Notes: generated by a model not told the origin, from the sequence alone. Numbered from the stretch's first letter, positions 6,503 to 55,174 are shown. The stretch: 64,000 nucleotides of DNA from Macrostomum lignano (GCA_002269645.1 NIVC01000038.1:1302001-1366000), one strand, 5' to 3'. Translations and numbers: made by a program.

Positions 6503-8796
6503 ATGCGAGCCCGACTCCGCACGGTGACCGGTGCCGCCCAGGAGGTGGCTGGCATCACGAGAACCCACGGCTTGCTGCACATCTTTCTGTCCAGAAGCAC
6601 AGCTCGACGGATCTTCTGGCTGCTTCTGTTCGTAGCTGCGCTGATCGGCTGCACCGTCCACCTGGCAAAGTTGGTGCAGAAGTTCACCGAGCGCTCCGTT
6701 GAGTCGCGGCTGAAGCTGAGGAGCGAACGAGCTCAGTTTCCCGACATCACAATCTGCAACTTCAAGCCCGCTTCTACTGGCTTAATGGAGGGTTTTTTTT
6801 TGAACGATACATGGAAATCTTCTGGGGCAACTTCACCAACTGGTTCCAGGAGGACACCAAGAAGCGCCCGCAAGAATCAGAGGAAGGCTACGAAAATCGA
6901 CTTGAGAAGGTGTGTAAGAAGCTCCTGGACGTGATGTGGGTGTCGGGCGACACCAGAGACGTCTCCCACCTCGATAAGACCATGCTGCTGAGCTGCCGCT
7001 ACAACAACGAGCCCTGCAGTCACAAGAACTTCTCGCTTGTCCAGACCAGCCGGTTCTGGAGCTGCTACACGTTCCACCCGGACCCGGGGCAGTCGTCCAG
7101 CGGTCCTGGGGGCAGGGGAGCCGAGCTCGACATGGTGCTCTTCACCGACGGATACCACAAAGTTTCTATGGAAGACAATTTAAACGAAAACGACTTAGAA
7201 TATTTGTCCCAATCTTGCTCTACTCGCCTATTTAAATGCAGCAATGATGTCAACCGGCTGCTGCAGAACAACGAGCTCCAGTCCACTGGATTGCGCGTTT
7301 TCGTTCACGAGGCGAAAAGCTACCCGATGAGTCGTACGTAATTTTTGCTTTGCTACCTGCAAGTTTACGAGTATTATTCTAACAGTAAAAAAGCAGACCG
7401 CAAGCAGCAGCAAAGGTTGGTCTCATTTGCAGAGCCTAACCCAGTTGCTTGTCGTAATTATGTAATATTATTTATTTCTATTTTAGGATAGAGTCTGAAA
7501 CAATTTTTATGTTACGGTTAAGAACTCTTCGTTCCAAACCAGTCTCATAGCCCATGCCAAACCCATGCCAAACCAGTCTCACAACCCATGCCAAACCAGT
7601 CTCACAGCCCATGCCAAACCAGTCTCACAGCCCATGCCAAACCCATGCCAAACCAGTCTCACAGCCCATGCCAAACCCATGCCAAACCGCAGAGACCGAG
7701 TTCGTGGACGTGGCCTCAGCCACCAGCACCTCCATCAAACTCAGGCCGGTCCACAACCGACTCATGTCGAAGCCCAGCCGCAGATGCTCCGAGCCTCCAA
7801 TCGAAACCATCAACTATGTCAGGCACTTCTCCAACGCCTCGCTGAACGTGGTCACCAAGGCCTACTCAAAGTCCGTCTCCGATTTCGTAGTCGAGGCACA
7901 GCAGAGCATCCTGCACAGCAACTGCGGCTGCTATTCGCACCTGCTCCCGTTCTCGGTGAATACGAGCGACCTGTGCTACTTCGCTCCACCGCAGGAGTGG
8001 ATCACCCCATCGGATGCTGTGCTCAAGAGAATTGACTGCCATGATCACTGGTTTGAGCACGCACAGAGGCAAAGCCAAGAGCTGGCGAAGGAGTTCCAAC
8101 ACCGGATGTGGTGCCAGTTCACTCAGCAACGGCCTTGGCAGCAGAGCCGCAGGTGGCCCCCGTTCAGCGCCATTCAAGAGATCTGGGAGAACCTGATGGT
8201 GCCGCAAGTCAGACATGGAGTCGAGTTCCTGCCCGAGGATGGCAAAGTGCATCATATCTATAGGAATAATACAGGTAACTATACCAGACAGGTATTGCAA
8301 CTAATACTGCTGGGACTTGTAGAAAAGTGCGACAGAAAAGGAATAAGTTTAAAAGATTTGGTTATGTCGAGTACGATTTGCGTTAAGCGTGACGAATTGG
8401 CCAAAAACCTGGCAGCAGTCCGCATCAGCTTGCAGAATCCTGCAGCGGACGTCTACGAAGAGAAGTACAAATACCACTGGACCGAGGCCCTGTCGGAGGT
8501 GAGAGTTGCATTCCGGTTGCAATATTCCCGCATTTGAGGCTGTTGCTCAGACCAAATTGCATGCTCATTTAAAATCGGCCCCAGCAACTTTGTCTCGCTC
8601 TGGTTGCTATAGAGATACTGAGCTGCGCTGTACCAATTTTCAATTTTTTCTCGATATTCCGCAGGTCGGAGGAACTCTGGGACTCTGGCTCGGCATCAGC
8701 GTCGTGAGCACATTTGAGCTGCTTGAGTTCATCTATATTCTGGTGCAGAGGTGCAGGAGAAATGATGACGACTCGGACACTGAAGAAGAGTCCTGA
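6503..8796 (+). CDS. DEG/ENaC family sodium channel (FaNaC-like), paralog 1; has a 1-nt frameshift in a T run
   Basis: Exons 6503-7333, 7693-8498 and 8665-8796. Motifs: N-terminal THG, TM1, FPDITICN, SCRYNNEPC, CYTF, Cys-rich thumb, and GGTLGLWLGISVVSTFE (TM2, G-x-S belt). One T is missing in the T9 run at 6793-6801; restoring it gives ~589 aa colinear with paralogs 2 and 3. Confidence 0.9.
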
Positions 8797-8897
8797 GTTC
8801 GAACCGGCAGCTCTCTGCATAGCGATTTGGATCGGTCACTGGGTTCAGTTTCAATGGCTGCTTCTTTATCACAGGCACAGCAAAAAAATACAAGAAA

Positions 8898-11242
8898 ATC
8901 CCTGTAATTTACTGTCACTGCATGATAAATCTCTGTAATTTACTGTCACAGCATGACAAATCCCTGTAATTTACTGTCACAGAAGGATAAATCTCTGTAA
9001 TTTACTGTCACAGCATGATCAATCCCTGTAATTTACTGTCACAGCCTGATCAATCTCTGTAATTTACTGTCACAGAAGGATAAATCTCTGTAATTTACTG
9101 TCACAGAAGGATAAATCTCTGTAATTTACTGCCACAGCATGATCAATCTCTGTAATTTACTGTCACAGCATGATCAATCTCTGTAATTTACTGTCACAGC
9201 ATGATCAATCTCTGTATTTACTGCCACAGCATGATCAATCTCTGTAATTTACTGCCACAGCATGATCAATCTCTGTAATTTACTGTCACAGAAGGATAAA
9301 TCTCTGTAATTTACTGTCACAGCATGATCAATCTCTGTATTTACTGTCACAGAAGGATAAATCTCTGTAATTTACTGTCACAGAAGGATAAATCCCTGTA
9401 ATTTACTGTCACAGAAGGATAAATCTCTGTAATTTACTGTCACAGCATGATCAATCCCTGTAATTTACTGTCACAGCATGATCAATCTCTGTAATTACTG
9501 CCACAGCATGATCAATCTCTGTAATTTACTGTCACAGCATGATCAATCTCTGTAATTACTGCCACAGCATGATCAATCTCTGTAATTTACTGTCACAGCA
9601 TGATCAATCTCTGTAATTACTGCCACAGCATGATCAATCTCTGTAATTTACTGTCACAGAAGGATAAATCCCTGTAATTTACTGTCACAGAAGGATAAAT
9701 CTCTGTAATTTACTGTCACAGCATGATCAATCCCTGTAATTTACTGTCACAGCCTGATCAATCTCTGTAATTACTGCCACAGCATGATCAATCTCTGTAA
9801 TTTACTGTCACAGAAGGATAAATCTCTGTAATTTACTGTCACAGCTTGATCAATCCCTGTAATTTACTGTCACAGCCTGATCAATCTCTGTAATTTACTG
9901 TCACAGAAGGATAAATCTCTGTAATTTACTGCCACAGCATGATCAATCTCTGTAATTTACTGTCACAGAAGGATAAATCTCTGTAATTTACTGCCACAGC
10001 ATGATCAATCTCTGTAATTTACTGCCACAGCATGATCAATCTCTGTAATTTACTGTCACAGAAGGATAAATCTCTGTAATTTACTGTCACAGAAGGATAA
10101 ATCTCTGTAATTTACTGTCACAGAAGGATAAATCTCTGTAATTTACTGCCACAGCATGATCAATCTCTGTAATTTACTGTCACAGCATGATCAATCTCTG
10201 TAATTTACTGTCACAGCCTGATCAATCTCTGTAATTTACTGCCACAGCATGATCAATCTCTGTAATTTACTGCCACAGCATGATCAATCTCTGTAATTTA
10301 CTGCCACAGCATGATCAATCTCTGTAATTTACTGCCACAGCATGATCAATCTCTGTAATTTACTGCCACAGCATGATCAATCTCTGTAATTTACTGCCAC
10401 AGCATGATCAATCTCTGTAATTTACTGCCACAGCATGATCAATCTCTGTAATTTACTGTCACAGAAGGATAAATCTCTGTAATTTACTGTCACAGCATGA
10501 TCAATCTCTGTATTTACTGTCACAGAAGGATAAATCCCTGTAATTTACTGTCACAGCATGATCAATCTCTGTAATTTACTGCCACAGCATGATCAATCTC
10601 TGTAATTTACTGTCACAGCATGATCAATCTCTGTAATTTACTGTCACAGCATGATCAATCTCTGTATTTTACTGTCACAGCATGATCAATCTCTGTAATT
10701 TACTGTCACAGCATGATCAATCTCTGTAATTTACTGTCACAGCATGATCAATCTCTGTATTTTACTGTCACAGCATGATCAATCTCTGTAATTTACTGCC
10801 ACAGCATGATCAATCTCTGTATTTTACTGTCACAGCATGATCAATCTCTGTAATTTACTGCCACAGCATGATCAATCTCTGTAATTTACTGCCACAGCAT
10901 GATCAATCTCTGTAATTTACTGTCACAGCATGATCAATCTCTGTAATTTACTGTCACAGCATGATCAATCTCTGTATTTTACTGTCACAGCATGATCAAT
11001 CTCTGTAATTTACTGTCACAGCATGATCAATCTCTGTAATTTAGTGTCACAGCATGATCAATCTCTGTATTTTACTGTCACAGCATGATCAATCTCTGTA
11101 ATTTACTGCCACAGCATGATCAATCTCTGTATTTTACTGTCACAGCATGATCAATCTCTGTAATTTACTGCCACAGCATGATCAATCTCTGTAATTTACT
11201 GCCACAGCATGATCAATCTCTGTATTTTACTGTCACAGCATG
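8898..11242. repeat. ~31-bp minisatellite (CTCTGTAATTTACTGTCACAGCATGATCAAT, with an AAGGATAAAT variant)
   Basis: Directly visible, immediately 3' of channel paralog 1. Confidence 0.95.
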
Positions 11243-11544
11243 ACAGTGTCTTCAATATGGGATTCAGTTTTTCGAATATTAACAAGTGCGCAATTTGTTT
11301 GACCTTTTATGTACCTAAAAACTACGAACCAATGTGTTCCTATCGCCAAAATACACCAACTCACAGCTAAATACTTTTCCTACATCCTTTGTTTTGAATA
11401 TTTAAAAATTTATCTTTGTCAAAATTCTTTTGCTGGATTTAGTACACCATTTTGTTTTACAATTTTTAACAAATTCGACATAAATTCAAACTGCATAAGC
11501 GTGTTACAGTGGGTTACTTAATTGTCAGCTTGACCCTCAATTGA

Positions 11545-12140
11545 CCCTCGATCCGCTGTGTCTGACCCCCAATCAACTGTGTCTGACCCTCCACCCGCTG
11601 TGTCTGACACCCAATCCGCTGTGTCTGACCCTCAATCCACTGTGTCTGACCCTCCACCCGCTGTGTCTGACACCCAATCTGCTGTGTCTGACACCCAATC
11701 CGCTGTGTCTGACCCTCAATCCACTGTGTCTGACCCTCCACCCGCTGTGTCTGACACCCAATCCGCTGTGTCTGACACCCAATCCGCTGTGTCTGACCCT
11801 CAATCCACTGTGTCTGACCCTCCACCCGCTGTGTCTGACACCCAATCAACTGTGTCTGACCCTCCACCCGCTGTGTCTGACCCCCAATCCGCTGTGTCTG
11901 ACCCCCAATCCACTGTGTCTGACCCCCAATCCGCTGTCTGACCCCAATCCGCTGTCTGACCCCCAATCCGCTGTGTCTGACCCCCAATCCGCTGTGTCTG
12001 ACCCCCAATCCGCTGTGTCTGACCCCCAATCCGCTGTGTCTGACCCCCAATCAACTGTGTCTGACCCTCCACCCGCTGTGTCTGACCCTCAATCCGCTGT
12101 CTGACCCTCCACCCGCTGTGTCTGACCCTCCACCCGCTGT
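11545..12140. repeat. 21-bp minisatellite (GCTGTGTCTGACCCTCAATCC)
   Basis: Directly visible; reverse complement of the 16.5-19.1 kb array. Confidence 0.95.
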
Positions 12141-12577
12141 TTCTGAACTTCAACCCAGCAACAACACCTCGTGATCACTAAAGCGACACTTAAAAGTTCT
12201 ATGGCTAAATAAGATGTTTTTTTAGGTAAAAAATGTTAGAAATTAATTTAATCCATCTCATCTGAGATCAGTGGGAAACTAGATAATGCCATCAATTGCC
12301 ACTTAGGCAATAGGCAAATTTGACACTCACAAATTTATGCACATCTTGAATTGGTGCGTTGTTGGGAAATGAAACGAAATAAATGGTGGGTTCAAGTGCA
12401 TGGTTTTCAATCAGTCAATCAATCACCATTCAAGTTTAGGAAAATTGGATCAAGAGCACTCAATCAGAGGTTTCATGACGATTTTCAATTTATCGCTAAT
12501 GCAAAAACACGCCAAATATTCAAATAAGTATGTAGCATAGAGCCGCTCTTCAAACTCCAAATCTTCACCGCATCGAG

Positions 12578-16425: not shown

Positions 16426-16544
16426 ATCCGGCCTGCTCAGGGTTTGTTTCTCTGCTCAGCCCTCTTCTCTCCTCTCGCTTCTCTCCCATCTCACGTCTCT
16501 CCCTTATCTCCTCTTTCTTCTCTCTCCTCTCTCCTGAGAAACAG

Positions 16545-19150
16545 CAGATAGAGGGTTAAATACAGCGGATTGAGGGTGAGACACAGCAGATAGAGGGTCA
16601 GACACAGCGGATTGAGGGTCAGACACAGCGGATTGAGGGTGAGACACAGCGGATTGAGGGTGAGACACAGCGGATTGAGGGTCAGACACAGCGGATTGAG
16701 GGTGAGACACAGCGGATTGAGGGTGAGACACAGCGGATTGAGGGTGAGACACAGCGGATTGAGGGTGAGACACAGCGGATTGAGGGTGAGACACAGCGGA
16801 TTGAGGGTCAGACACAGCGGATTGAGGGTGAGACACAGCGGATTGAGGGTCAGACACAGCGGATTGAGGGTGAGACACAGCGGATTGAGGGTCAGACACA
16901 GCGGATTGAGGGTGAGACACAGCGGATTGAGGGTGAGACACAGCGGATTGAGGGTGAGACACAGCGGATTGAGGGTGAGACACAGCGGATTGAGGGTCAG
17001 ACACAGCGGATTGAGGGTGAGACACAGCGGATTGAGGGTGAGACACAGCGGATTGAGGGTCAGACACAGCGGATTGAGGGTGAGACACAGCGGATTGAGG
17101 GTGAGACACAGCGGATTGAGGGTGAGACACAGCGGATTGAGGGTGAGACACAGCGGATTGAGGGTGAGACACAGCGGATTGAGGGTGAGACACAGCGGAT
17201 TGAGGGTGAGACACAGCGGATTGAGGGTGAGACACAGCGGATTGAGGGTGAGACACAGCGGATTGAGGGTCAGACACAGCGGATTGAGGGTGAGACACAG
17301 CGGATTGAGGGTGAGACACAGCGGATTGAGGGTGAGACATAGCGGATTGAGGGTGAGACACAGCGGATTGAGGGTCAGACACAGCGGATTGAGGGTGAGA
17401 CACAGCGGATTGAGGGTGAGACACAGCGGATTGAGGGTCAGACACAGCGGATTGAGGGTGAGACACAGCGGATTGAGGTTGAGACACAGCGGATTGAGGG
17501 TGAGACACAGCGGATTGAGGGTGAGACACAGCGGATTGAGGGTGAGACACAGCGGATTGAGGGTGAGACACAGCGGATTGAGGGTGAGACACAGCGGATT
17601 GAGGGTGAGACACAGCGGATTGAGGGTGAGACACAGCGGATTGAGGGTCAGACACAGCGGATTGAGGGTGAGACACAGCGGATTGAGGGTCAGACACAGC
17701 GGATTGAGGGTGAGACACAGCGGATTGAGGGTGAGACACAGCGGATTGAGGGTCAGACACAGCGGATTGAGGGTGAGACACAGCGGATTGAGGGTCAGAC
17801 ACAGCGGATTGAGGGTGAGACACAGCGGATTGAGGGTGAGACACAGCGGATTGAGGGTGAGACACAGCGGATTGAGGGTGAGACACAGCGGATTGAGGGT
17901 CAGACACAGCGGATTGAGGGTGAGACACAGCGGATTGAGGGTGAGACACAGCGGATTGAGGGTGAGACACAGCGGATTGAGGGTAAGACACAGCGGATTG
18001 AGGGTGAGACACAGCGGATTGAGGGTGAGACACAGCGGATTGAGGGTGAGACACAGCGGATTGAGGGTGAGACACAGCGGATTGAGGGTGAGACACAGCG
18101 GATTGAGGGTGAGACACAGCGGATTGAGGGTGAGACACAGCGGATTGAGGGTGAGACACAGCGGATTGAGGGTGAGACACAGCGGATTGAGGGTCAGACA
18201 CAGCGGATTGAGGGTGAGACACAGCGGATTGAGGGTGAGACACAGCGGATTGAGGGTGAGACACAGCGGATTGAGGGTGAGACACAGCGGATTGAGGGTC
18301 AGACACAGCGGATTGAGGGTGAGACACAGCGGATTGAGGGTCAGACACAGCGGATTGAGGGTGAGACACAGCGGATTGAGGGTGAGACACAGCGGATTGA
18401 GGGTCAGACACAGCGGATTGAGGGTGAGACACAGCGGATTGAGGGTCAGACACAGCGGATTGAGGGTGAGACACAGCGGATTGAGGGTCAGACACAGCGG
18501 ATTGAGGGTGAGACACAGCGGATTGAGGGTGAGACACAGCGGATTGAGGGTGAGACACAGCGGATTGAGGGTGAGACACAGCGGATTGAGGGTGAGACAC
18601 AGCGGATTGAGGGTGAGACACAGCGGATTGAGGGTGAGACACAGCGGATTGAGGGTGAGACACAGCGGATTGAGGGTGAGACACAGCGGATTGAGGGTCA
18701 GACACAGCGGATTGAGGGTGAGACACAGCGGATTGAGGGTGAGACACAGCGGATTGAGGGTCAGACACAGCGGATTGAGGGTGAGACACAGCGGATTGAG
18801 GGTCAGACACAGCGGATTGAGGGTGAGACACAGCGGATTGAGGGTCAGACACAGCGGATTGAGGGTGAGACACAGCGGATTGAGGGTGAGACACAGCGGA
18901 TTGAGGGTGAGACACAGCGGGTGGAGGGTCAGACACAGCGGGTGGAGGGTCAGACACAGCGGGTGGAGGGTCAGACACAGCGGATTGAGGGTCAGACACA
19001 GCGGATTGAGGGTGAGACACAGCGGATTGAGGGTCAGACACAGCGGGTGGAGGGTCAGACACAGCGGATTGAGGGTCAGACACAGCGGGTGGAGGGTCAG
19101 ACACAGCGGATTGAGGGTCAGACACAGCGGATTGAGGGTGAGACACAGCG
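16545..19150. repeat. Highly homogeneous 21-bp minisatellite (GACACAGCGGATTGAGGGTGA/CA)
   Basis: Directly visible. It explains the 880-aa and 853-aa ORFs. Confidence 0.97.
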
Positions 19151-20129: not shown

Positions 20130-22284
20130 TCAGTCTGGAGACCCCTCGGACTCCGAGCCGGTCGTTCCGCCGCGGCAGCGCTGCGCCAGGATGTAGAAAA
20201 ACTCGAGCAGCTCGAACGTGCTGACAACGCTGATTCCCATCCAGAGCCCCAGAGTTCCTCCGACCTGTGGGATTTCAACGGCACCAACCAATCATTGATC
20301 GAGCATGCGAAACTCGAAATAGCGTCAAACATCGCGTTTGATAAATAGACAGTCCTTGATGCAGTATTATTTGCTAAAACATTAAAGTTACTTGAGAATT
20401 AGTTGGTTTGATAAGCTCCCGAGACAACTACTTTGACTGCAATGTTGATTAGCAGGAACACTCTCCGCATTTCTAAGGCCAATGTGTGAAATGCCTCACC
20501 TCGGACAGAGCTTCAGTCCAGTGGTAGCCGGCCTTCTCTTTGTAAACGTCAGCTGCCGGGCTCTGCAAGCTGATGCTGACTGATGCCAGGGTGTCAGCCA
20601 AAGTTTTTTGGTAGATGCAGTAGGACATGTTTTTCAGATGCTGCAGCATCAAAGAAATGTTGCATTCGTAATAATAACTCCTGGTGGAATTTCTGCAGAA
20701 GAAGCTAAAGCAGTTATGGTCTTGCGTAAGAAACATCAAAATTTGCCCTAATTGTCGAGATTGATTCATATTCCTATAGATATGATGCACTTTGCCATCC
20801 TCGGGCAGGAACTCGACTCCATGTCTGTATTGCGGCGGCATCATCAGGTTCTCCCAGATCTCTTGAACGGCGCTGAACGGGGGCCACCTGCGGCTCTGCT
20901 GCCAAGGCCGTTGCTGAGTGAACTGGCACCACATCCGGTGCTGGAACTCCTTCGCCAGCTCCTCGCTTTTCCTCTGTGCGTGCTCGAGCCAGATGTCATG
21001 GCAGTCAATTCTCTTGAGCACAGCATCCGATGGGGTGATCCACTCCTGCGGTGGAGCGAAGTAGCACAGGTCGCTCGTATTTACCGAGAATGGGAGCAGG
21101 TGCGAGTAGCAGCCGCAGTTGCTGTGCAGGATGCTCTGCTGTGCCTCGACTACGAAATCGGAGACGGACTTTGAGTAGGCCTTGGTGACCACGTTCAGCG
21201 AGGCGTTGGAGAAGTGCCTGACATAGTTGATGGTTTCGATTGGAGGCTCAGAGCATCTGCGGCTCGGCGTCGACTTGAGTCGGTTGTGGATCGGCCTGAG
21301 TTTGATGGAGGTGCTGCTGGCTGAGGCCACGTCCACGAACTCCGTCTCTGCGGTTTGGCATGGATTTTCCAGTGTCCGTTATCACGTAACTATTTTCTAT
21401 AAATTTTCCAATAAATGTTCAAATAACTCAAATAAGATCTCCATTAAATGATACGTACGGCTCATCGGGTAGCTGTGCGCCTCGTGAATAAAAAGTCGCA
21501 GTCCTTTCGACTGAGGATAACTGCTTTTCAGCAACCTGTTCGTCGCGCCTTGACGCGCAATTAGTCGCTTGAAGCAGACTCCCACAGAATCGGAATTTAG
21601 GAAGTCATTACGAGGCTTAGAGGACACAGTGTAGCCATCGGTGAAGAGCACCATGTCCAGCTCGGCTCCCCTGCCCCCAGGACCGCTGGACGACTGCCCC
21701 GGGTCCGGGTGGAACGTGTAGCAGCTCCAGAACCGGCTGGTCTGGACAAGCGAGAAGTTCTTGTGACTGCACGGCTCGCTGTTGTAGCGGCAGCTCAGCA
21801 GCATGGTCTCATCGAGGTGGGAGACGTCTCTGGTGTCGCCTGACACCCACATCACGTCCAGGAGCTTCTTGCACACCGTCTCAAGTCGGTTTTCGTAGCC
21901 TTCATCCGATTCTTGCGGGCGCTTCTTGGTGTCCTCCTGGAACCAGTTGTCGAATTTACCCCAATATTTTTTCAAGTAGTCGTGATAAACTTCAAACCGA
22001 GTCAAAGATGAAGAAGCGGGCTTAAAGTTGCAAATTGTGACGTCGGGAAACTGGGCTCGTTCGCTCCTCAGCTTCAGCTGCGACTCAACGGAGCGATCGG
22101 TGAACTTCTGCACCAACTTGGCCAGGTGGACGGTGCAGCCGATCAGAGCAGCTACGAACAGAAGCAGCCAGAAGAGCCGTCGAGCTGTGCTTCTGGACAG
22201 GAATATGTGCAGCAAGCCGTGGGTTCTCGTGATGCCAGCCACCTCCTGGGCGGCATCGGTCACCGTGCGGAGTCGGGCTCGCAT
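20130..22284 (-). CDS. DEG/ENaC family sodium channel (FaNaC-like), paralog 2, intact, ~602 aa
   Basis: Exons 22284-21459, 21347-20500 and 20264-20130, with GT/AG at the same positions and phases as paralogs 1 and 3. TM2 is GGTLGLWMGISVVSTFE. Confidence 0.93.
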
Positions 22285-25602: not shown

Positions 25603-25956
25603 TATATTACTGTTTTTATAATATCGTGCAATTACTTCGTGGATTGCAGCCAGATGGTATAATCTAAAAGTAAAAAAACTCAAAAAGCAACTTGAGGTCG
25701 TAAATTAACATTCGAAAAAAACAATTACTTACAAAAACTGATAAAAAATATTTTTCCTCAGATCTGCTACTGACATCCGCCGCCGTAGTAGCCAAAGCTG
25801 CGCCTTTGTCGGCAATTAACTTGGGCTCACCAGCAGCTGTAGCAGGCGCTGAGTTCCCACCAGCTCGAGTGGATAAATGCCGACTCGCAATGCCTGCTCA
25901 AATTTGCAACTCAAAGTGGCCGCTCCAATCAGCGACTCCCATTGGCGACTCAGCAA

Positions 25957-30804: not shown

Positions 30805-31744
30805 CTTAAAGCATTGACATTTCAGTAATTCTCTCCGAGAGTCATTATAGCACTACAGCGTTATAGCGATTCCCTGCAAGCCTCGACATCGTAGGGATTC
30901 CCAAATGAATCTCTTAACTTCGACATGAAGCTTCTTTTATTTTTTACATTACACTTTATCTATCAGCGATCCTTCCCGTGAAGAGCCAACAAATAATGAA
31001 AACATTTTTTCAATAAACTACATCATCTACATGTAGCTTGTGAATTTAGCCTTGACATCTCGGTTATTCCCCCGTGAGCCTTGACATCTCAGCTATTCCC
31101 CCCGTAAGCCTTGTCATGTTAGCGATGCCCCCCATAAACCTTGATATCTGAAAAATCCCCTGTTAATCTTGAAACCCGCTAAAATCTAACCCTCAACCCA
31201 AACCTGACCTAAACCTAACTTTAACCCAACCTAAAGCCTTGAAATCTCAGCAATTCTTCTCCCCTAAGCCTTGACATTTTAGTGATTCCTTATTTAAGAA
31301 TCACAGCACCATAGCGATTCCCTCCAAGCCTTGGCATCGTAGCAATTCCCAAATGAATCTTTTAACTTTGACATAATGACTCTTCTTTTATGTACACATA
31401 GTGCTTCTTCTCTTTTTTACATGACTCTTCTTCTATCAGCGCCCCCTCCCCCGTAGCGAGCCAACAAAGAATGTAATAAAAAATTGAGTAAACTACATGT
31501 ACTTTGAAGTAGCTTCTGACGTTTGCTACTTTGCTTCTCTGGCATCTCAGAAACCGCCTCCCCATAATCTCAGTTATTCTCCGTGAGCCTTGACATCTTA
31601 GTAATTCTCCCCAGCACAGCACAATAGCTTCTTTTAATTTTTACATGACACTTCTTTCATGTCTGACATGACGCTTCTTTTATTCTTCCATGACGCTTCT
31701 ATGATTTCTCAAATGACACTTCCATTAGTTTTTATATGAGGCTT

Positions 31745-39000: not shown

Positions 39001-42000
39001 AGCTGCAGGCGCCTGGGGTTTCGCTGAATTCTTAGCAGCGTCAACTTTGAAGGTTGCCATGTCGCCATTCTTGAGTAAATATTTAATGATGTATTTCACG
39101 GCTCGAACCGTCGCGCAAACTTCAACGTTCAGGTGGCAGTTGAACATGAGCAACAGCTCTCGATTATATGGCACGACCCACCTTGCGTTTTGAAGGGAAT
39201 TCCGGGTTCGTTGCTTGTTAATAATTTTAAATGAATGCTTTAAATTCAAGATGGTAAATCATGAAAATTCAAGAAGCAGAAAGAAGCAATGCTAGAATTT
39301 TCTGAACCAGAATTGTAAAAACTTAGCTAATAAAAGAATGCTAAGATGGGCGGGCAGCTCACTCATGTGGAAATCCCCTTTTTTACTCACCTGTTGTCCA
39401 TACGAATGGTTCGGCCCTTGCATAATTTGTCGACGGTGAAGCCGCCCATTTCTGGTGACAGTCTCCGATAAAACGGGTAACCGGTTTCGCTAGACATCGT
39501 CACCGACTGGAAGTCCTTCGGGAAGCCTTTGGTGCACTTCCCCTTCTCCATGCAGGGACAGGCTGGGTTATCCGCCCCACATGGTCCGTGGATGAGGTGC
39601 GTCTTGACCAGCTCATGCAGCACCGGCTCAAGCTGTGGGTCTGGGATCTCCGCAGACACAAGCGCGTCGTACCGATCTGGAGTTACTCGGTGTCCGCTGG
39701 CCAGCCACAGTAGAAAGTGCACATGTGGAAGTCCTTCAGTGAAATGAAAATCAAACCAGAAAAGTATTTACTGGAAGGGAGCATGCTAGAGCAAGGTAGA
39801 AACATCAGTGAGGCTTGAACTCAGCAGAAAGCAAAGTGTAATGAATAAGTTATTTCTGATCAACTGAACTCACCGCGCTTCTGGTATTCCAGGAACAAAC
39901 GTGCGCGGCTTCCACTCCAAAGCGATGTCTGAGCTCCGACACGAGGGCCTTCTTCTTAAGCTCGAAGACACGAGTAACGATGTCAGGACGATCCTCTGGC
40001 CGCTGTCCTGGCAGCAGTTCAGCGGTGATCTCTGGCCACTTCGGATTGCAAGTCGCCGTCACGAACAGATCCGGCTTGCCGAATTTCTGAACGTAAGTCA
40101 TGGCGTCCTGGAGCCGCTCCATCAGATATCGCGGTCCGCCCACGAAGCTTGAGGAGAGAAACACGGGCGCCTGCTTTCCAATTTCCTTCGGCTCCTTGCC
40201 AGTGTGCAGTCCATCAGCTGCAAACAGGGCATCACGCAACCCACTGTAGGTCTCGCTGCGAAGGTCGTCCTGATGAGTACGCAAATAGAGAAGCCTCTCC
40301 GACTCGATCTTGGCCGCCTGATCCACCAGGTACTGCTGAAACAGCCGCCGGCCGTGGTGCAGCACGTTGAACTGGTCGGCTCGCACCATGATCTCGCTGG
40401 CGTAATACTTCATGGGAGTCAGTTTGCGGCCATTGGTCATGCGAAGCTCGGGATACCAGCCGCTCTCTCCGTTCGGAAACAGAAGGACGTACTCTAGCGG
40501 ATCGTATGATCTGTGTGTCTCAGAAATGCGCTTGGTGTCACCTCCTCGCAGTTGGATGACGACTTCACGACTGTTCGGTGCTTCCTCAGCATCCCCGACA
40601 ATTAGGATTCCGACCTCGTTTGCCGTGGGCAGATTGTACCGCCTTATTGTGGACAGACGGGGTTTCAATCAAATTTATTATACTATATTAGAAGATTCTA
40701 CTAAAATATCCATGTTTGAAAAATGCAGCTTACCGAATGTGTTCACCAGCCGGGCGTCGATCTGGGTGAATCACAATCCGCACATCGCACAGCTGAGGCT
40801 CTTCGCTGATTCGCTGCGCTGCAGCTCGCAGACTCCGCACATAGGAATTGCACTCGTGAAGCAATCCTTGCAGCAACTGCAGCAGCTCAGGCTTCACTCT
40901 TTGGCTGAGGCTGAGGCGGCTTTCGAGCTCGCGGTCCATAAAGTACACCTGCCAGCCCCTAGGCGCATTCGGAGCATCAGCTAGCAGCGGCGCAGTGTTG
41001 TGGTACAACTTTCCGCTGATCACAAAGCTCGGGTTCCAACCACCAGGCGTGGGTCGCAGATCAGCACCGAATGACGTCAGGTGCAGAACCGAGTTATAGC
41101 TCCTGATGTTGGCCAGGAACTCCTTGCTCTTCTCATGCCTTCCGGTGTACAGGTCAGCCAACACTGGCGGAACAGTCCGGAGAGGCAATTTCACTTTGCC
41201 CTTGGCGCAGCAAAACTCGGCTTCCTTGTCCCAGCGCAATGCGCCGCAGAACTTGCACACAGAATTCATGCGGCCACACTGATGGGTCGGCACTTCTGGT
41301 CTTGGCTGGTCGGAGTTCCTGCAATAAATTTTCGGCAGAGTGTCAGTTAATTTTATTAACATTATTTTTCCAGTCACTGAAAGTGTCTCTTTAGAGTAAG
41401 TTAAAGTTAAGAATTATATGAGACTACGCATAGAAAAAATAGCGGACGAAATTGAGTAAAAAAATCAAGTTAGCCGCTGGGAGGTTTAAGCACCTGATTA
41501 TGTGAGAATGAACGGAACAATTATTTTCTATGTAAAAACTGTTATAAAAACCTCAATAAGCATGCCTGCTTAAGTATCGTTTGTGGCTCACTTTTCTGAT
41601 CCCTGTCCTTTAGTGGGATTACTATAAAGAGTAAAAACTTGTATAGCATAATCGCCGCCCATCAGACATTACCTCTGCTGAGCTTCTGCTTCGTTTCCAG
41701 CTTGAGTCTCCGCACGAGTGTCAGGAGCAGAAGTAGCAGCAGCTGAGCCAGTAGGTCTCTTGCGCCAGTTGACTCTGGTCCTTGCAGCAGGTGCTCTACT
41801 TGCAGCAGGAACGGGGAACTCCCGGTCCTCCATAGGCTCTATTCCCTGCAAAGGATCTCGGAGTCTCAGAGATTCATAGTGCTCATTGCTCAGAACCAGG
41901 CGCACAACAGCCAGAGGAGGCTGCGCGAAGGACATAAAGTGCTGCAGCACACTTCCATTGCGCTGGTAAATAACCAGGTCAACCGGAAAGCAGCGACTTA

Positions 42001-45776: not shown

Positions 45777-46739
45777 AGCATTGAAATTTCAGTAATTCTC
45801 TCTAAGAGTCTATAGCACTACTACAGCATTATAGCGATTCCCTGCAAGCCTCGACATCGTAGGGATTCCCAAATGAATCTCTTAACTTTGACATGAAGCT
45901 TCTTTTTTTTTTACATTACGCTTTTTCTATCAGCGATCCCTCCCGTGAGGAGCCAACAAATAATGTAATAACTTTTTTCCAATAAACTACATGTAGCTTC
46001 TGACATTAGCCTTGACATCTCATTTATTCCCCCGTGAGCCTTGACATCTCAGCTATAGATAGATAGATAGATTCCCCTCGTAAGCCTTGACATGTCAGCG
46101 ATGCCCCCATAAACCTTGAAATCTAAAAAATCCCCTGTTAACCTTGAAACGCGCTAAAATCTAACCCTCAACCCAAACCTGACGTAAACCTAACTTTCAC
46201 CCAACCTAAAGCCTTGAAATCACAGCAATTCTTCTTCCCTAAGCCTTGGCATTTAAGTGATTCCTTCTTTAAGAATCACAGCACTATAACGATTCCCTCC
46301 AAGCTTTGACATCGTAGCAATTCCCAAATGAATCTTTTAACTTTGACATGACTTTTATTTTATGTATACATAGTGCTCCTTTTATTTTTACATGACTCTT
46401 CTTCTATCAGCGCCCCCCCCACCGTGGCAAGCCAACAAAGAATGCAATAAAAAACTTAAGTAAAGTACATGTACTTTGAAGTAGCTTCTGACTTTTGCTT
46501 TAACATCTCAGAAACCCCCTGTAATCTCAGTTATTCTCTGTGAGCCTTGACGTCTCAGTAATTCTCCCCAGCACAGCACTGTACTATAGCTTCATTTAAT
46601 TTTTATATGACATTTCTTTCATGTCTGACATGACGCTTCTTTTGATTTTTACGTTACGCTTCTTTTATTCTTCCATGATGCTTCTTAATTTTTTAAATGA
46701 CACACTTTCATTAGTTTTTATATGAGGCTTCTATAATTT

Positions 46740-47640
46740 TTTCATGACGCTTCTATGCTTGTTTACATGACGCTTGTATGATTTTTACATGACGCTTCTA
46801 TGATTGTTTACATGACGCTTGTATGATTGTTTACATGACGCTTCTATGATTTTTTACATGACGCTTTTATGATTTTTACATGACGCTTCTATGATTTTTT
46901 ACATGACGCTTCTATGATTTTTACATGACGCTTCTATGATTTTTACATGATGCTTCTATGATTTTTACATGACGCTTCTATGATTTTTACATGACGCTTC
47001 TATGATTTTTTACATGACGCTTCTATGATTGTTTACATGACGCTTCTATGATTGTATACATGACGCTTCTATGATTGTTTACATGACGCTTTTATGATTG
47101 TTTACATGACGCTTCTATGATTTTTACATGACGCTTCTATGATTTTTACATGACGCTTCTATGATTGTTTACATGACGCTTCTATGATTGTTTACATGAC
47201 GCTTCTATGATTTTAACATGACGCTTCTATGATTTTTTTACATGACGCTTCTATGATTGTTTACATGACGCTTCTATGATTGTTTACATGACGCTTGTAT
47301 GATTTTAACATGACGCTTCTATGATTGTTTACATTACGCTTCTATGATTGCTTGCATGACGCTTCTATGATTTTTTATGACGCTTTTATGATTTTAACAT
47401 GACGCTTCTATGATTTTTTTACATGACGCTTCTATGATTGTTTACATGACGCTTGTATGATTGTTTACATGACGCTTTTATGATTTTAACATGACGCTTC
47501 TATGATTGTTTACATTACGCTTCTATGATTTTTACATGACGCTTCTATGATTTTTACATGATGCTTCTATGATTGTTTACATGACGCTTCTATGATTGTT
47601 TACATGACGCTTGTATGATTGTTTACATGACGCTTCCATA
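46740..47640. repeat. 22-23-bp satellite inside H1, same family as in H3
   Basis: Directly visible. Confidence 0.95.
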
Positions 47641-47695
47641 ATTTTTTTTGTCTTGGCGTTAAAAGGCTTTAATTAAAAAAACTCTACTCTCTAAA

Positions 47696-51985: not shown

Positions 51986-52089
51986 ATTTCTTTGCCCGCC
52001 ATTCATGTTTTTCACGCCAAACTTTAAACCATCCACTTCTCAGTAGTCAAGCTTTGCGCTGTGACTTAAATGTATTGGCCCGTACTGTA

Positions 52090-52187: not shown

Positions 52188-52708
52188 TTCGCGCAACTCA
52201 GAGCAGCTCTTATTGGACTCAGACCTGTCTATTTTAGATTCAGGAAAAGCATGCAAAAACAGCTTTTGGTAGGACGCTGCGCCAGAGCATGTACTCGTAC
52301 ATGCATGTGCAAGGTGGACCTGAGACAGGCCTACAGGATAGGTAGTGTGGCATTCTTTGCTTTGCTTCCCTCGGATTTCCTTTCTTTCCAAGGACAACTT
52401 GGTATTGAGTAGTCCCTGTCTCTTTCTTGCGCTCAGAAAGTCTGTGGTATTGGTATATACTCGTAGTTATCGGTGCAAGTGTACCCAAGGGCACAAAAGT
52501 AAACAATAACAAAAATTTTTCTATTTCATTGCGCTTGTGACATTCACCCATATAGCTATATGTTGAACTTATGTGATGGCGGCAATCGGTCTATGGTCAT
52601 AATTGTGCACTTCTGGTACGAGCCATCCTGATTAAAATGCAAACATCGCAGTATTCGTACTCTTTCTATAACTAGACGCGCGTATACAGAAACTTCACAA
52701 AGTAAAGA

Positions 52709-55174
52709 ATGCAAGACCGACTCCGCACGGTGACCGGTGCCGCCCAGGAGGTGGCTGGCATCACGAGAACCCACGGCTTGCTGCACATCTTCCTGTCCAG
52801 AGGCACAGCTCGACGGCTCTTCTGGCTGCTTCTGTTCGTAGCTGCGCTGATCGGCTGCACCGTCCACCTGGCAAAGTTGGTGCAGAAGTTCACCGAGCAG
52901 TCCGTTGAGTCGCAGCTGAAGCTGGGGAGCGAACGAGCCCAGTTTCCCGACGTCACAATCTGCAACTTCAAGCCCGCTTCTGCTAGCTTAATAAGGTGGA
53001 ATATTTATCACGACTACCTGAATAAATCCTGGGGCAACTTCGACAACTGGTTCCAAGAGGACACCAAGAAGCGCCCGCAAGAATCGGATGAAAGCTACGA
53101 AGACCGACTTGAGACGGTGTGCAAGAAGCTCCTCGACGTGATGTGGGTGTCAGGCGACACCAGAGACATCTCCCACCTAGATAAGACCATGCTGCTGAGC
53201 TGCCGCTACAACAGCGAGCCGTGCAGTCACAGGAACTTCTCGCTTGTCCAGACCAGCCGGTTCTGGAGCTGCTATACGTTCCACCCGGACCCAGGGCAGT
53301 CGTCCAGCGGTTCTGGGGGCAGGGGAGCCGAGCTGGACATGGTGCTCTTCACCGATGGTTATGCCGAACCGTCTATCCATCATTATGAATTCCTAAATTC
53401 CGAATCTGTGGGAGTCTGCGTCAATCGAATAATTTTGGGTCAGGATGCGACGAACAGGTTGCTGAGAGGCAGTGATCCTCAGTCAGAAGGACTGCGACTT
53501 TTTATTCACGAGGCGCACAGCTACCCGATGAGCCGTACGTATCATTTCATTGAGGTCTTTTTGAGTTGTATTCATTTGAGAATTTACAGAAAAATAGTTC
53601 CATGATCACGGACACAAGAGAATCCATGTCAAACCGCAGAGACGGAGTTCGTGGACGTGGCCTCAGCCACCAGCACCTCCATCAAACTCAGGCCGATCCA
53701 CAACCGACTCAAGTCGACGCCGAGCCGCAGATGCTCCGAGCCTCCAATCGAAACCATCAACTATGTCAGGCACTTCTCCAACGCCTCGCTGAATGTGGTC
53801 ACCAAGGCCTACTCAAAGTCCGTCTCCGATTTCGTAGTCGAGGCACAGCAGAGCATCCTGCACAGCAACTGCGGCTGCTATTCGCACCTGCTCCCGTTCT
53901 CGGTGAATACGAGCGACCTGTGCTACTTCGCTCCACCGCAGGAGTGGATCACCCCATCGGATGCTGTGCTCAAGAGAATTGACTGCCATGATCACTGGTT
54001 TGAGCACGCACAGAGGCAAAGCGATGAGCTGGCGAAGGAGTTCCAGCACCGGATGTGGTGCCAATTCACTCAGCAACGGCCTTGGCAGCAGAGCCGCAGG
54101 TGGCCCCCGTTCAGCGCCATTCAAGAGATCTGGGAGAACCTGATGGTGCCGCAAGTCAGACATGGAGTCGAGTTCCTGCCCGAGGATGGCAAAGAGCATC
54201 ACATATTCAGGAATATGAATCAATCTCGACAATACAGCCAAATTTTACCATTTCTAAACGACGATGACTGCATGAGTTTCTTTTGCAATCACAGCCATAA
54301 GGATTACTATTATTGCGATACTTTACTGATTCAGCTGTATTTGAAGCAAGCGTCGGGTTGCATCGAGCGGTACACTTTGTCTCGCAGCCTGGCGTCAGTC
54401 AGCGTCAGCTTGCAGAGCCCGGCAGCTGACGTTTACAAAGAGAAGGCCGGCTACCACTGGACTGAAGCTCTGTCCGAGGTGAGACATTTCACACATATTG
54501 GCCTTAGAAATGCGGAGAGTGTTGCCACCTGTCAACATTGCAGTCGAAGTATATATACAGTTGTCTGATCGAGAGATTCATCCAGCTAACGAAAGTCCGT
54601 TCAAAGCGGACTAAAAACATTCTGTAAGTCCTGTTTTAACATTTGATATATGGCACTTTTGAGCAGCATTCTTTTTTTAAGTGATTTGAGATATTTGGTC
54701 TAAAATGTCTCAAGGTTAGAATTCCGTAGTGTTAAATAATACTTTAATAACTAAAATATATTAACCAAGGACAATTAAAGCAACGTAATATACAGGACTT
54801 GACACTCGAAATCTATGGAAAATGTTTTGAAGGCCACTTTTCGCCGAAAATGCACTACCGGAGGTAACAAGTTTTCATTTTTCAGCACAAAAACTGTTAT
54901 TGCTTTCGATAGGAGGCAAATCCACTGTTCATATTTTGATATGATGTGCCTTTCTTATTGCTTTATTGATATTCATAAAGCTTTTCGTTCCGAAAATTAA
55001 GATTCAATGTTAATTTTTGATTCTACGGACATTCCGAAGGTCGGAGGAACTCTGGGGCTCTGGCTGGGAATCAGCGTTGTCAGCACCTTCGAGCTGCTCG
55101 AGTTTTTCTACATTCTGGCGCAGCGATGTCGCGGCGGAACCACCGGCTCGGAGTCCGAGGGGTCTCCAGACTGA
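52709..55174 (+). CDS. DEG/ENaC family sodium channel (FaNaC-like), paralog 3, intact, ~599 aa
   Basis: Exons 52709-53534, 53640-54478 and 55040-55174. Same exon structure and motifs as paralogs 1 and 2. Confidence 0.93.

What the first reader, a model, noticed from the sequence alone, without database searches (positions are those of the whole stretch)
6503..55174. DEG/ENaC paralogs with a near-invariant scaffold and three hypervariable cassettes on the predicted ligand-binding crown
Seen: the three genes are almost identical in DNA over most of their length, often including synonymous sites, but diverge abruptly in three more AT-rich segments. V1 follows CNFKPAS (TGLMEGFFFERYMEIF / SSLTRFEVYHDYLKKY / ASLIRWNIYHDYLNKS; ~6775-6825, ~21965-22015, ~52980-53030). 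V2 lies between FTDGY and GLR.F.HE (~7155-7285, ~21510-21630, ~53360-53485). V3 lies between HHI.RN and LA.V.ISLQ and varies in length and Cys pattern (~8265-8410, ~20590-20770, ~54215-54385). Established: in the ASIC/FaNaC fold these positions correspond to finger helix a1, the b6-b7 loop and the knuckle region, which to my knowledge line the FMRFamide pocket of FaNaC; the TM2 GIS belt is also FaNaC-like. Inference: an expanded family of peptide or chemosensory receptor channels whose pore and scaffold are homogenised while the ligand face diversifies, possibly multiplied further by heterotrimer assembly.
Basis: partly seen in the sequence, partly recalled or inferred. Interest (0 to 1): 0.85.

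Follow-up and report, generated by a model that had tools for sequence, protein, structure and literature searches.

The report
Flatworm sodium-channel genes with swapped-in variable patches
Three flatworm (Macrostomum lignano) DEG/ENaC channel genes are kept almost identical over their long conserved blocks by gene conversion between copies. Three short stretches escape this and differ strongly; two of them match walls of the peptide pocket in related FMRFamide-gated channels and the third lies beside it. What the channels sense is unknown.

Summary
Three 3-exon DEG/ENaC genes (A +, B -, C +) share near-identical blocks, interrupted by three AT-rich divergent segments, V1-V3.

Two corrections apply:
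- The 3' quarter (S3, S5, S6) is also deeply diverged between A and B/C at synonymous sites.

The source is Macrostomum lignano. At least 11 paralogous loci on nine contigs show the same pattern.

Synonymous divergence between the two clades is 0.04-0.24 in the long blocks (273, 333, 575 nt). It is 0.5-1.5 in the short blocks and saturated in V1-V3. The long blocks have 1 fixed difference and 33 shared polymorphisms; the short blocks have 44 and 1. This is concerted evolution by ectopic gene conversion, not young duplicates with fast-evolving patches.

V1 maps to finger helix alpha1 and V2 to the beta6-beta7 loop. V3 is an insert after knuckle helix alpha6, not alpha6 itself. dN/dS in V is about 1, so diversifying selection is not shown.

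Copy C is the published construct Mlig049925.g2, which gave no current with five peptides.

The parts
6503..8796 (+). Copy A: DEG/ENaC gene. Exons 6503-7333, 7693-8498, 8665-8796 (stop TGA 8794-8796). GT/AG introns in phase 1 and phase 0. Annotated in the assembly as BOX15_Mlig029354g2 (P0008), starting only at 6811.
   Evidence: model, splice sites; P0008 / L007 = window.
6793..6801 (+). T9 homopolymer inside V1 of copy A. As assembled it gives a -1 frameshift, with a stop after 143 codons. This is either a pseudogene lesion or a long-read homopolymer error.
   Evidence: Copy P0010, at a contig end, shows many such indels, so assembly error is plausible.
20130..22284 (-). Copy B: intact DEG/ENaC gene of 602 aa. 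Exons 22284-21459, 21347-20500, 20264-20130. It lies tail-to-tail with copy A, 11.3 kb away.
52709..55174 (+). Copy C: intact DEG/ENaC gene of 599 aa. Exons 52709-53534, 53640-54478, 55040-55174. Its protein is identical to the published construct Mlig049925.g2.
   Evidence: 2 synonymous differences in 1797 nt.
6776..6822 (+). V1 of A (B: 22011-21964; C: 52982-53029). 16 codons, or 29-30 in the P4 subclade. Corresponds to finger helix alpha1.
   Evidence: PMC11026163; bioRxiv 10.1101/2023.02.01.526556.
7156..7287 (+). V2 of A (B: 21630-21505; C: 53363-53488). 37-44 codons. This is the beta6-beta7 loop, about 25 aa longer than in FaNaC1, and contains a family-conserved Cys.
8268..8408 (+). V3 of A (B: 20769-20590; C: 54215-54388). 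47-60 codons with 2 or 4 Cys. A helical insert between knuckle helix alpha6 and strand beta11.
7693..8267 (+). S4 (B: 21347-20770; C: 53640-54214). The longest homogenised block, 575-578 nt, encoding beta7 to alpha6. All paralog pairs differ by 2-7% with no clade structure. Cross-clade identical runs reach 228 nt.
6503..6775 (+). S1 (B: 22284-22012; C: 52709-52981): homogenised block of 273 nt covering the N-terminus, TM1 and beta1. S2 (A 6823-7155; B 21963-21631; C 53030-53362), 333 nt covering alpha2-alpha3 to beta6, behaves likewise.
8409..8796 (+). S5 (8409-8498) and S6 (8665-8796) of A, and likewise S3 (7288-7333). These short blocks of 46-135 nt are conserved in protein (beta11, beta12, TM2) but deeply diverged in DNA between A and B/C: dS 0.5-1.5 and 44 fixed differences.

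Best explanation
A, B and C belong to a Macrostomum-specific DEG/ENaC subfamily that sits next to, not inside, the FMRFamide-gated channel (FaNaC) family. They are presumed subunits of trimeric Na+ channels.

The paralogs are old: synonymous divergence between the two clades is at least 1. They now lie on many contigs.

- **Long blocks.** The three long blocks of uninterrupted homology (S1 273 nt, S2 333 nt, S4 575 nt) are repeatedly copied between paralogs. This keeps them 93-98% identical, even at silent sites, and GC-rich.
- **Short blocks.** Blocks hemmed in by a V segment and a divergent intron (S3 46 nt, S5 90 nt, S6 135 nt) keep the old divergence.
- **V segments.** V1-V3 also keep the old divergence. 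They are surface elements: alpha1 of the finger, the extended beta6-beta7 loop, and a helical insert after knuckle helix alpha6. They tolerate substitutions and indels (dN/dS about 1). Once diverged, they break homology and so bound the conversion tracts.
- **Reassortment.** Recombination within the shared blocks re-sorts V cassettes among copies.

Inferred, not shown: V1 and V2 occupy the positions that wall the FaNaC peptide pocket, so they most likely set which ligand or modulator acts at that corner site. The conserved alpha2, alpha6, palm, thumb and pore would carry out a common gating mechanism.
For: **Identity**
- Pfam ASC, E=2e-53.
- The best PDB sequence and fold matches are FaNaCs.
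- Source and family members were identified.
- The paralogs lie on nine contigs, counting the window's own.

**Age versus homogenisation**

| Segment | Cross-clade dS |
|---|---|
| S1 | 0.04-0.10 |
| S2 | 0.08-0.24 |
| S4 | 0.07-0.10 |
| S3 | 0.5-0.7 |
| S5 | 0.6-0.7 |
| S6 | 1.05-1.5 |
| V1-V3 | saturated (mostly above 1 or incalculable) |

- For A vs C, synonymous differences are 24.5/258 in the long blocks against 33.1/61.5 in the short blocks (p=1e-13).
- In S4, the cross-clade distance P4-C (0.02) is smaller than the within-subclade distance P4-P7 (0.05).

**Recombination signature**

| Measure | S1+S2+S4 | S3+S5+S6 |
|---|---|---|
| Fixed differences | 1 | 44 |
| Shared polymorphisms | 33 | 1 |
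| Site pairs failing the four-gamete test | 46% | 4% |
| PHI p-value | 0.0095 | 0.92 |

- Copy B shares the 'HHIYRN' codons with its neighbour A. B's 97%-identical duplicate P1 instead shares 'EHHIFRN' with C and P2.
- In the youngest pair, B-P1, S4 has dS 0.074. V and S5/S6 have dS at or below 0.03, and the flanking intergenic DNA differs by about 2-3%.
- Cassettes reassort: V1 groups C with P2 (0.12), but V3 groups B with P2 (0.19).
- GC3 is 0.74-0.85 in the converted blocks against 0.38-0.55 in V, as GC-biased conversion predicts.

**Structure**
- The AF2 model of P0001 has pLDDT 85.
- V1-V3 were mapped by alignment to 7yvb and 8on7 and by the pocket definitions in PMC11026163 and PMC11993918.
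- The alpha2 Cys and the V2 Cys co-occur in the family and are both absent from P0012 and P0013.

**Independent check of the sequence**
- The transcript-derived construct Mlig049925.g2 matches copy C across all block/V junctions.
Against: - No orthologues from another Macrostomum species were available. The classical test, paralogs within a species being closer than orthologues between species, was not run.
- All DNA comes from one long-read assembly that has visible indel errors. Cross-paralog read correction could in principle create some shared 'polymorphisms'.
- PHI significance within the scaffold is moderate (p about 0.01).
- GC3 differences could also reflect codon-usage selection in constrained regions.
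- Whether the V segments persist because of selection or merely because they block heteroduplex formation is unresolved.
- The functional role of V1-V3 rests on homology only.
- The one expressed member, C, gave no current with five peptides (PMC9234716). That result is also compatible with poor expression or a need for a partner subunit.
- I could not obtain model coordinates, so the 3D proximity of V1, V2 and V3 was not measured.
Confidence: 0.75

Rival explanations
1. V1-V3 are ligand-contact cassettes under diversifying (positive) selection. Selection actively keeps them different against the homogenising flow, giving an expanded repertoire of peptide or chemosensory receptors.
For: - V1 and V2 are homologous to pocket walls of FaNaC (PMC11026163).
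- dN/dS in V is about 1 or higher although some V sites are clearly constrained (conserved Cys, NRLL, SRQ), so some sites may exceed 1.
- The P4 subclade gives 1.91, nominal p=0.033. Single segments reach about 3-4: P4-P159 V2 has 1/27 synonymous against 14/99 nonsynonymous differences.
- Within clade II, V1 and V3 stay diverged (dS 0.4 to above 1) while every flank, including S3/S5/S6, is homogenised.
Against: - Pooled dN/dS over four independent close pairs is 1.20 (p=0.43); clade II gives 0.87.
- V synonymous divergence is as high as in the neutral short blocks, so most V difference reflects age, not rate.
- Some P4-clade copies carry frameshifts and may be pseudogenes, which pushes dN/dS toward 1.
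- No ligand is known, and copy C was silent with five peptides.
Confidence: 0.3
2. Purely neutral mosaic. V1-V3 are unconstrained loops with no role in specificity. They drifted apart, and by breaking homology they define where conversion tracts can run. The channels are functionally redundant.
For: - dN/dS is about 1, with length variation and AT drift toward intron-like composition.
- The segments that escape homogenisation between clades are exactly those shorter than about 140 nt of uninterrupted homology. This includes blocks that encode highly constrained protein such as TM2, so escape needs no selection.
- Several copies carry frameshifts.
Against: - The V segments keep their helical pattern, Cys positions and flanking motifs across clades and in the 31-40% identical paralogs P0012 and P0013.
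- AF2 predicts ordered helices there, with pLDDT 62-85.
- Their positions are those used for ligand recognition in the nearest characterised family.
Confidence: 0.3
3. Assembly or polishing artefact. Long-read correction mixed reads from paralogs, creating false near-identity and false shared variants in the conserved blocks.
For: The assembly is PacBio-based and shows indel errors (T9 in A; many indels in P0010 at a contig end).
Against: - The transcript-derived construct for copy C agrees with the genome at 1795 of 1797 nt across all junctions.
- Proteins from a second source (UniRef entries P0003, P0005, P0006, P0009) show the same architecture.
- Each copy is embedded in unique flanks on contigs of 0.1-1.5 Mb.
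- S5/S6 of similar length are not mixed.
Confidence: 0.05
4. Recent duplication of one gene, followed by localised hypermutation or very fast evolution in three patches, with no gene conversion.
For: It matches the superficial appearance of near-identical genes with three divergent patches.
Against: - S3, S5 and S6 show dS of 0.5-1.5 with conserved protein, so the copies are old.
- The long blocks show 33 shared polymorphisms, and 46% of site pairs fail the four-gamete test.
- Distances in S4 contradict the clade structure seen elsewhere.
Confidence: 0.02

Closest known systems
FMRFamide-gated sodium channels (FaNaC; Aplysia 7YVB/7YVC, Malacoceros FaNaC1 8ON7-8ONA)
   Same: - They are the best sequence and fold matches.
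- The TM2 GIS motif is shared.
- The beta7 arginine (Aplysia R288) is conserved as GLR.F.H.
- Both have a long segment between alpha6 and beta11.
- In FaNaCs, finger alpha1-alpha3 is also the most sequence-divergent part even between close relatives (PMC11026163).
   Different: - Sequence identity is only 15-19%.
- The beta9 glycine (Aplysia G316) is Lys here, and R529 is Ser.
- The published phylogeny places the Macrostomum genes in a neighbouring platyhelminth/phoronid branch.
- Copy C gave no FMRFa-gated current (PMC9234716).
- alpha2, the key FaNaC1 ligand helix, is invariant here, while alpha1 and the much longer beta6-beta7 loop vary.
The platyhelminth/phoronid DEG/ENaC branch of Dandamudi, Hausen & Lynagh 2022 (M. 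lignano Mlig049925.g2)
   Same: Copy C is this gene: the protein is identical and the DNA has 2 synonymous differences.
   Different: That study used a single sequence for phylogeny and expression. It does not describe the paralog family, the V1-V3 mosaic or the gene conversion.
Concerted evolution with escape of variable regions in multigene families (own knowledge: e.g. MHC and KIR loci, venom and reproductive protein families)
   Same: Homogenised backbone, divergent recognition segments, mosaic phylogenies, and GC enrichment of converted tracts.
   Different: - Here it occurs in a trimeric ligand-gated-type ion channel family of a flatworm, among dispersed loci.
- The length of uninterrupted homology alone predicts which blocks are homogenised.
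- Positive selection is not demonstrated.
Lineage-specific DEG/ENaC expansions (Drosophila pickpocket, C. elegans degenerins, Hydra HyNaC)
   Same: Many paralogs, with the finger domain as the main site of divergence. Some are chemosensory or peptide-gated.
   Different: Those paralogs are diverged along their whole length. To my knowledge, near-identity of long blocks at silent sites has not been described for them.

Membership tests
DEG/ENaC superfamily | Match to the family profile (Pfam PF00858, ASC) | tested here: met
   E=2.4e-53, 182 bits against a cutoff of 23.6.
DEG/ENaC superfamily | Two transmembrane helices flanking a large Cys-rich extracellular domain with the palm, finger, thumb and knuckle fold | tested here: met
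   AF2 model with pLDDT 85, pTM 0.82, and TM1, beta1-12, alpha1-6, TM2 in the canonical order. Foldseek top 50 hits are all FaNaC or ASIC.
DEG/ENaC superfamily | Pre-TM1 HG motif and TM2 G/S-x-S selectivity motif | tested here: met
   'THGLLH' and 'GLWLGISVVS' are present in all copies.
FaNaC family | Phylogenetic placement inside the FaNaC/WaNaC clade | not tested
   I built no tree. The published tree places Mlig049925.g2 (= copy C) in an adjacent platyhelminth/phoronid branch with poor support (PMC9234716). My searches only show that FaNaCs are the nearest solved structures.
FaNaC family | Direct activation by FMRFamide or related peptides | not testable with these tools
   Published oocyte data for the protein of copy C show no response to FMRFa, YMRFa, FVRIa, GRTNNKNVFRWa or AYGSMPWa, alone or co-injected (PMC9234716). 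The authors note that poor expression cannot be excluded.
FaNaC family | beta7 arginine required for peptide activation (Aplysia R288) | tested here: met
   It aligns with the invariant R of 'GLR(L/V/I)F(I/V)H'.
FaNaC family | beta9 glycine crucial for FMRFa activation (Aplysia G316) and the beta11 arginine (R529) | tested here: not met
   G316 aligns with K of 'TSIKLRP'. R529 aligns with S of 'LASVSISLQ'.
FaNaC family | GIS motif at the TM2 break | tested here: met
   GIS is present in all copies. The motif is described for FaNaC1 in PMC11026163.
Concerted evolution by ectopic gene conversion | Strong heterogeneity of synonymous divergence along the same gene pair | tested here: met
   dS is 0.04-0.24 in the long blocks against 0.5-1.5 in the short blocks, p about 1e-11 to 1e-13.
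Concerted evolution by ectopic gene conversion | Shared polymorphism, four-gamete failures and segment-wise incongruent relationships | tested here: met
   33 shared and 1 fixed in the long blocks against 1 shared and 44 fixed in the short blocks. PHI p=0.0095. Distance matrices are; counts are.
Concerted evolution by ectopic gene conversion | Paralogs within a species more alike than orthologues between species in the converted blocks | not tested
   No other Macrostomum genome was reachable. Protein searches returned only M. lignano members.
Diversifying-selection receptor cassettes | dN/dS significantly above 1 in the variable segments | tested here: inconclusive
   Pooled 1.20 (p=0.43); P4 subclade 1.91 (nominal p=0.033); clade II 0.87.

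The most novel reading that the evidence does not exclude
The family may be a combinatorial receptor repertoire.
- Three cassettes, two of them (V1, V2) at the FaNaC-type corner pocket and V3 beside it, would be kept diverse by selection.
- They would be reassorted by recombination within the homogenised blocks.
- A fixed gating and pore machine could then be paired with many ligand specificities, multiplied further by heterotrimer assembly.

This would be an ion-channel analogue of variable-region receptor families, operating in a flatworm sensory or peptidergic system.
Probability: 0.2. Interest if true: 0.8.

Novelty: new variant of a known kind. Interest (0 to 1): 0.55.

Why it matters
DEG/ENaC channels are gated by very different stimuli, and the outer finger/knuckle corner is thought to be where that diversity arises. 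This family is a natural experiment. A dozen copies share essentially the same alpha2, alpha6, palm and thumb (the pore, TM2, is conserved in protein only) and differ almost only in alpha1, the beta6-beta7 loop and a knuckle insert. If these segments set ligand or modulator specificity, the paralogs are ready-made chimeras for locating determinants of gating in the FaNaC-related branch, whose flatworm members are still orphan channels.

It is also a clean case of how the length of uninterrupted homology decides which parts of a gene are homogenised. That is a caution for dating duplicates and for dN/dS scans in polyploid, repeat-rich genomes such as M. lignano.

Tried and rejected
- **Bacterial-style ORF listing:** it only showed that the genes are split. 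Models were built by hand from a 3-way alignment.
- **The repeat finder on the whole window:** the output was swamped by a 21-bp minisatellite, so I used blastn in a script instead.
- **First AF2 run with an 8-sequence family alignment:** it failed (pLDDT 39.7) and was discarded.
- **Two further word-indexed protein searches:** they returned only M. lignano members (nothing new; three more, P0013, P0159, P0160). The deeper alignment had to be built from the exhaustive representative search.
- **Spliced window proteins:** P0001, 96% identical to copy B, was used as a proxy.
- **'Young duplicates with hypermutable patches':** rejected because S3/S5/S6 are old.
- **Synonymous-site constraint as the cause of scaffold identity:** rejected because of shared polymorphisms and four-gamete failures.
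- **Assembly artefact:** judged unlikely after the match to the published cDNA.
- **A short intron or alternative splice rescuing the frameshift in A:** none is plausible within the 50 nt concerned.
- **Literature searches:** nothing on gene conversion in this family or on expression of Mlig049925 beyond PMC9234716.
- **3D distances between V1, V2 and V3:** not measured, because model coordinates are not exposed.

Full report
**What is in the window**

A three-way alignment of 6400-8900 (+), 22400-20100 (-) and 52600-55250 (+) shows three homologous genes. Each has three exons, with GT/AG introns in phase 1 and phase 0.

| Copy | Strand | Exons |
|---|---|---|
| A | + | 6503-7333, 7693-8498, 8665-8796 |
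| B | - | 22284-21459, 21347-20500, 20264-20130 |
| C | + | 52709-53534, 53640-54478, 55040-55174 |

B and C encode intact proteins of 602 and 599 aa. Copy A, as assembled, has a run of nine T at about 6793-6801 inside V1. This shifts the frame and gives a stop after 143 codons. A is therefore either a pseudogene or carries a homopolymer error of a long-read assembly. Another paralog at a contig end (P0010) is riddled with such indels, so an error is plausible. I could not decide between the two.

**Checking the observation**

| Segment | A | B | C |
|---|---|---|---|
| V1 | 6776-6822 | 22011-21964 | 52982-53029 |
| V2 | 7156-7287 | 21630-21505 | 53363-53488 |
| V3 | 8268-8408 | 20769-20590 | 54215-54388 |

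- Differences are concentrated in the V segments far beyond chance (A-C Fisher p=3e-119; B-C p=1e-42).
- The V segments are AT-richer: GC 0.31-0.50 and GC3 0.38-0.55, against GC 0.57-0.61 and GC3 0.74-0.85 in the long conserved blocks. Introns have GC 0.32-0.45.
These are S3 (46 nt), between V2 and intron 1; S5 (90 nt), between V3 and intron 2; and S6, which is exon 3 and encodes TM2 and the tail.

**Source and family**

Protein searches identify the organism as the flatworm Macrostomum lignano. The window is part of contig NIVC01000038.1 of assembly GCA_002269645.1.

I fetched the DNA of further paralogs on eight other contigs:
- P0001 and, beside it, X1
- P0002
- P0004
- P0007
- P0010
- P0159
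- P0160

P0005/P0009 and P0006 are known only as proteins. All members share the same conserved blocks and carry their own V1-V3.

Distant paralogs P0012 (31%) and P0013 (40%) have the same architecture with different sequence throughout, so the blocks are not intrinsically immutable.

Locus L001 is a collinear duplicate of window 9.8-27.9 kb, about 97-98% identical, with the order lectin, B-like gene, minisatellites, A-like gene. From my own knowledge, M. lignano has a recent hidden genome duplication, which would explain such pairs.

**How the pattern arose**

Two clades are evident from V1-V3, S3, S5, S6 and the C-terminal tail: {A, X1, P4, P7, P10, P159, P160} and {B, P1, P2, C}. Nei-Gojobori estimates between clades are as follows.

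| Segment | Cross-clade dS |
|---|---|
| S1 | 0.04-0.10 |
| S2 | 0.08-0.24 |
| S4 | 0.07-0.10 |
| S3 | 0.5-0.7 |
| S5 | 0.6-0.7 |
| S6 | 1.05-1.5 |
| V1-V3 | saturated (mostly above 1 or incalculable) |

For A-C the contrast in synonymous differences is 24.5/258 in the long blocks against 33.1/61.5 in the short blocks (p=1e-13). The copies are therefore old. It is the long blocks that are anomalously similar, not the V segments that are anomalously fast.

Recombination signatures in the two classes of block:

| Measure | S1+S2+S4 (1181 columns) | S3+S5+S6 (271 columns) |
|---|---|---|
| Fixed differences between clades | 1 | 44 |
| Shared polymorphisms | 33 | 1 |
| Informative site pairs failing the four-gamete test | 46% | 4% |
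| PHI permutation p | 0.0095 | 0.92 |

Further observations point the same way:
- In S4, a cross-clade pair (P4-C, 0.02) is closer than a within-subclade pair (P4-P7, 0.05).
- Identical runs between clades reach 228 nt.
- B shares the codons of 'HHIYRN' with its neighbour A. Its duplicate P1 shares 'EHHIFRN' with C and P2.
- In the youngest pair, B-P1, S4 has dS 0.074. V, S5 and S6 have dS at or below 0.03 and the intergenic flanks differ by 2-3%, so variants were imported into S4 from other paralogs.

This is concerted evolution by ectopic gene conversion among both neighbouring and dispersed copies.

The blocks that are homogenised between clades are the long ones (273, 333 and 575 nt). Those that are not are shorter than 140 nt and are bounded by a V segment and an unalignable intron. 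A simple requirement for uninterrupted homology predicts the whole pattern, including the escape of TM2, which is under strong purifying selection. Within clade II the introns are still alignable, and there S3, S5 and S6 are homogenised too, while V1 and V3 remain diverged. The high GC3 of the converted blocks fits GC-biased conversion; this is an inference.

**Are the V segments under diversifying selection?**

Protein-guided codon alignments of the least saturated pairs give dN/dS near 1:
- V2: 1.0-1.6
- V1: about 1.15-1.2
- V3: 0.4-1.25

The long blocks give roughly 0.1-0.9 in individual comparisons, and 0.08-0.33 in the largest block, S4. Pooled over four independent close pairs, V gives 1.20 (p=0.43). 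The P4 subclade alone gives 1.91 (nominal p=0.033) and clade II gives 0.87. This is compatible with relaxed constraint or with a mixture of constrained and positively selected sites. It does not demonstrate positive selection.

Cassettes do reassort. P2 has a C-like V1 (0.12) but a B-like V3 (0.19). P7 and P160 have identical V1 but differ by 10% in V3.

**Where the V segments lie**

The proteins match Pfam ASC. The nearest solved structures by sequence are Aplysia FaNaC (7yvb, E=6.5e-26), then ASIC1.

An AF2 model of P0001 (96% identical to B) from a 45-sequence alignment has pLDDT 85 and pTM 0.82. Its best structural matches are FaNaC1 and Aplysia FaNaC (E about 1e-23, TM 0.64-0.70), followed by ASICs.

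According to PMC11026163 and PMC11993918, the FMRFamide pocket is made of three elements:
- alpha1-alpha3a of the finger (V87-F144 in FaNaC1)
- the beta6-beta7 loop (D234-G241)
- alpha6 of the adjacent subunit (F431)

From the alignment with both FaNaCs and the model's secondary structure:
- **V1** is alpha1. It aligns with the Aplysia segment around Y156 that earlier chimera and mutant work tied to FMRFamide recognition.
- **V2** is the beta6-beta7 loop. Here it is about 25 residues longer and is predicted as three short helices (pLDDT 62-77).
- **V3** is a four-helix insert (pLDDT 62-82) between alpha6 and beta11.
- alpha2 carries the most influential FaNaC1 residues, and alpha6 contributes F431. 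Both are invariant in this family.

A Cys in alpha2 ('VCKK') and the V2 Cys are both present in the family and both absent from P0012 and P0013. This suggests a disulfide tying V2 to the finger; it is an inference. I had no access to model coordinates, so the mutual proximity of V1-V3 was not measured.

**Comparison with what is known**

The CDS of copy C is the construct 'Macrostomum_Mlig049925.g2' of Dandamudi, Hausen and Lynagh 2022. It has 2 synonymous differences in 1797 nt and an identical protein. This confirms the gene model independently.

In that paper the gene falls in a small platyhelminth/phoronid branch next to the FaNaC branch. In oocytes it gave no response to FMRFa, YMRFa, FVRIa, GRTNNKNVFRWa or AYGSMPWa, alone or co-injected with two other M. 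lignano subunits. The authors caution that expression may have failed.

Of the FaNaC determinants named there:
- The beta7 arginine (R288) is conserved.
- The beta9 glycine (G316) is Lys.
- R529 is Ser.
- The GIS motif is shared.

The genes are thus DEG/ENaC members that resemble FaNaCs. They should not be filed as FaNaCs.

I found no paper describing the paralog mosaic or gene conversion in this family.

**Verdict**

- The 'diversifying ligand face' half is plausible by homology but unproven.
- The only functional datum is negative for five peptides.
- The phenomenon is a new variant of a known kind: concerted evolution with escaping variable segments, here in a FaNaC-related channel family. 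It is of moderate interest, mainly as a set of natural chimeras for finding what gates these orphan channels.

Noticed in passing
window 7694-8896 vs L001 22180-20978: Copy A and its counterpart X1 on contig NIVC01000349.1 differ by at most one base across exon 2, V3, intron 2, exon 3 and the 3' UTR. The surrounding duplicated DNA, and the neighbouring B/P1 pair, differ by 2-3%. This suggests a very recent conversion between the two duplicated segments.
   Followed up: partly
window 8897-11243: A 31-bp minisatellite (about 76 copies, 93% matches) begins about 100 bp after the stop codon of copy A.
   Followed up: no
window 11542-12146 and 16535-19150: The same 21-bp minisatellite occurs as two arrays in inverted orientation (29 and 125 copies) between copies A and B. 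The arrangement is conserved in the duplicate locus L001.
   Followed up: no
window 7534-7688: Intron 1 of copy A holds a 23/34/57-bp tandem repeat built from the sequence just upstream of the acceptor site (CCCATGCCAAACC...). It makes this intron 359 nt, against 105-111 nt in B and C.
   Followed up: no
window 25942-27705 (+): An ORF with a C-type lectin domain plus cornifin-like proline-rich repeats lies upstream of copy B. The same gene neighbours the B-like copy in L001 (2109-3281).
   Followed up: partly
window 36066-41377 (-): Helitron-type transposon remains: Helitron_like_N, PIF1 helicase and Pif1 2B / UvrD_C domains spread over several broken ORFs.
   Followed up: no
window 56163-59927 (-): A Ty3/gypsy-type LTR retrotransposon pol region (aspartyl protease, RT, RNase H, integrase) lies in three consecutive ORFs just downstream of copy C.
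   Followed up: no
window 31627-33794 and 46599-47646: The same 23-bp AT-rich minisatellite (ATTTTTACATGACGCTTCTATG) occurs in two large arrays 13 kb apart. Many other minisatellites cover a large share of the window.
   Followed up: no
L004 (P0007), L005 (P0010): Paralog P0007 has a single frameshift near codon 440. P0010, at a contig end, has about six indels and in-frame stops in V1. These are either pseudogenes or assembly errors, and they affect how many functional family members exist.
   Followed up: partly
window 62892-63773 (-): An ORF with a calcineurin-like metallophosphoesterase domain (E=3e-37).
   Followed up: no
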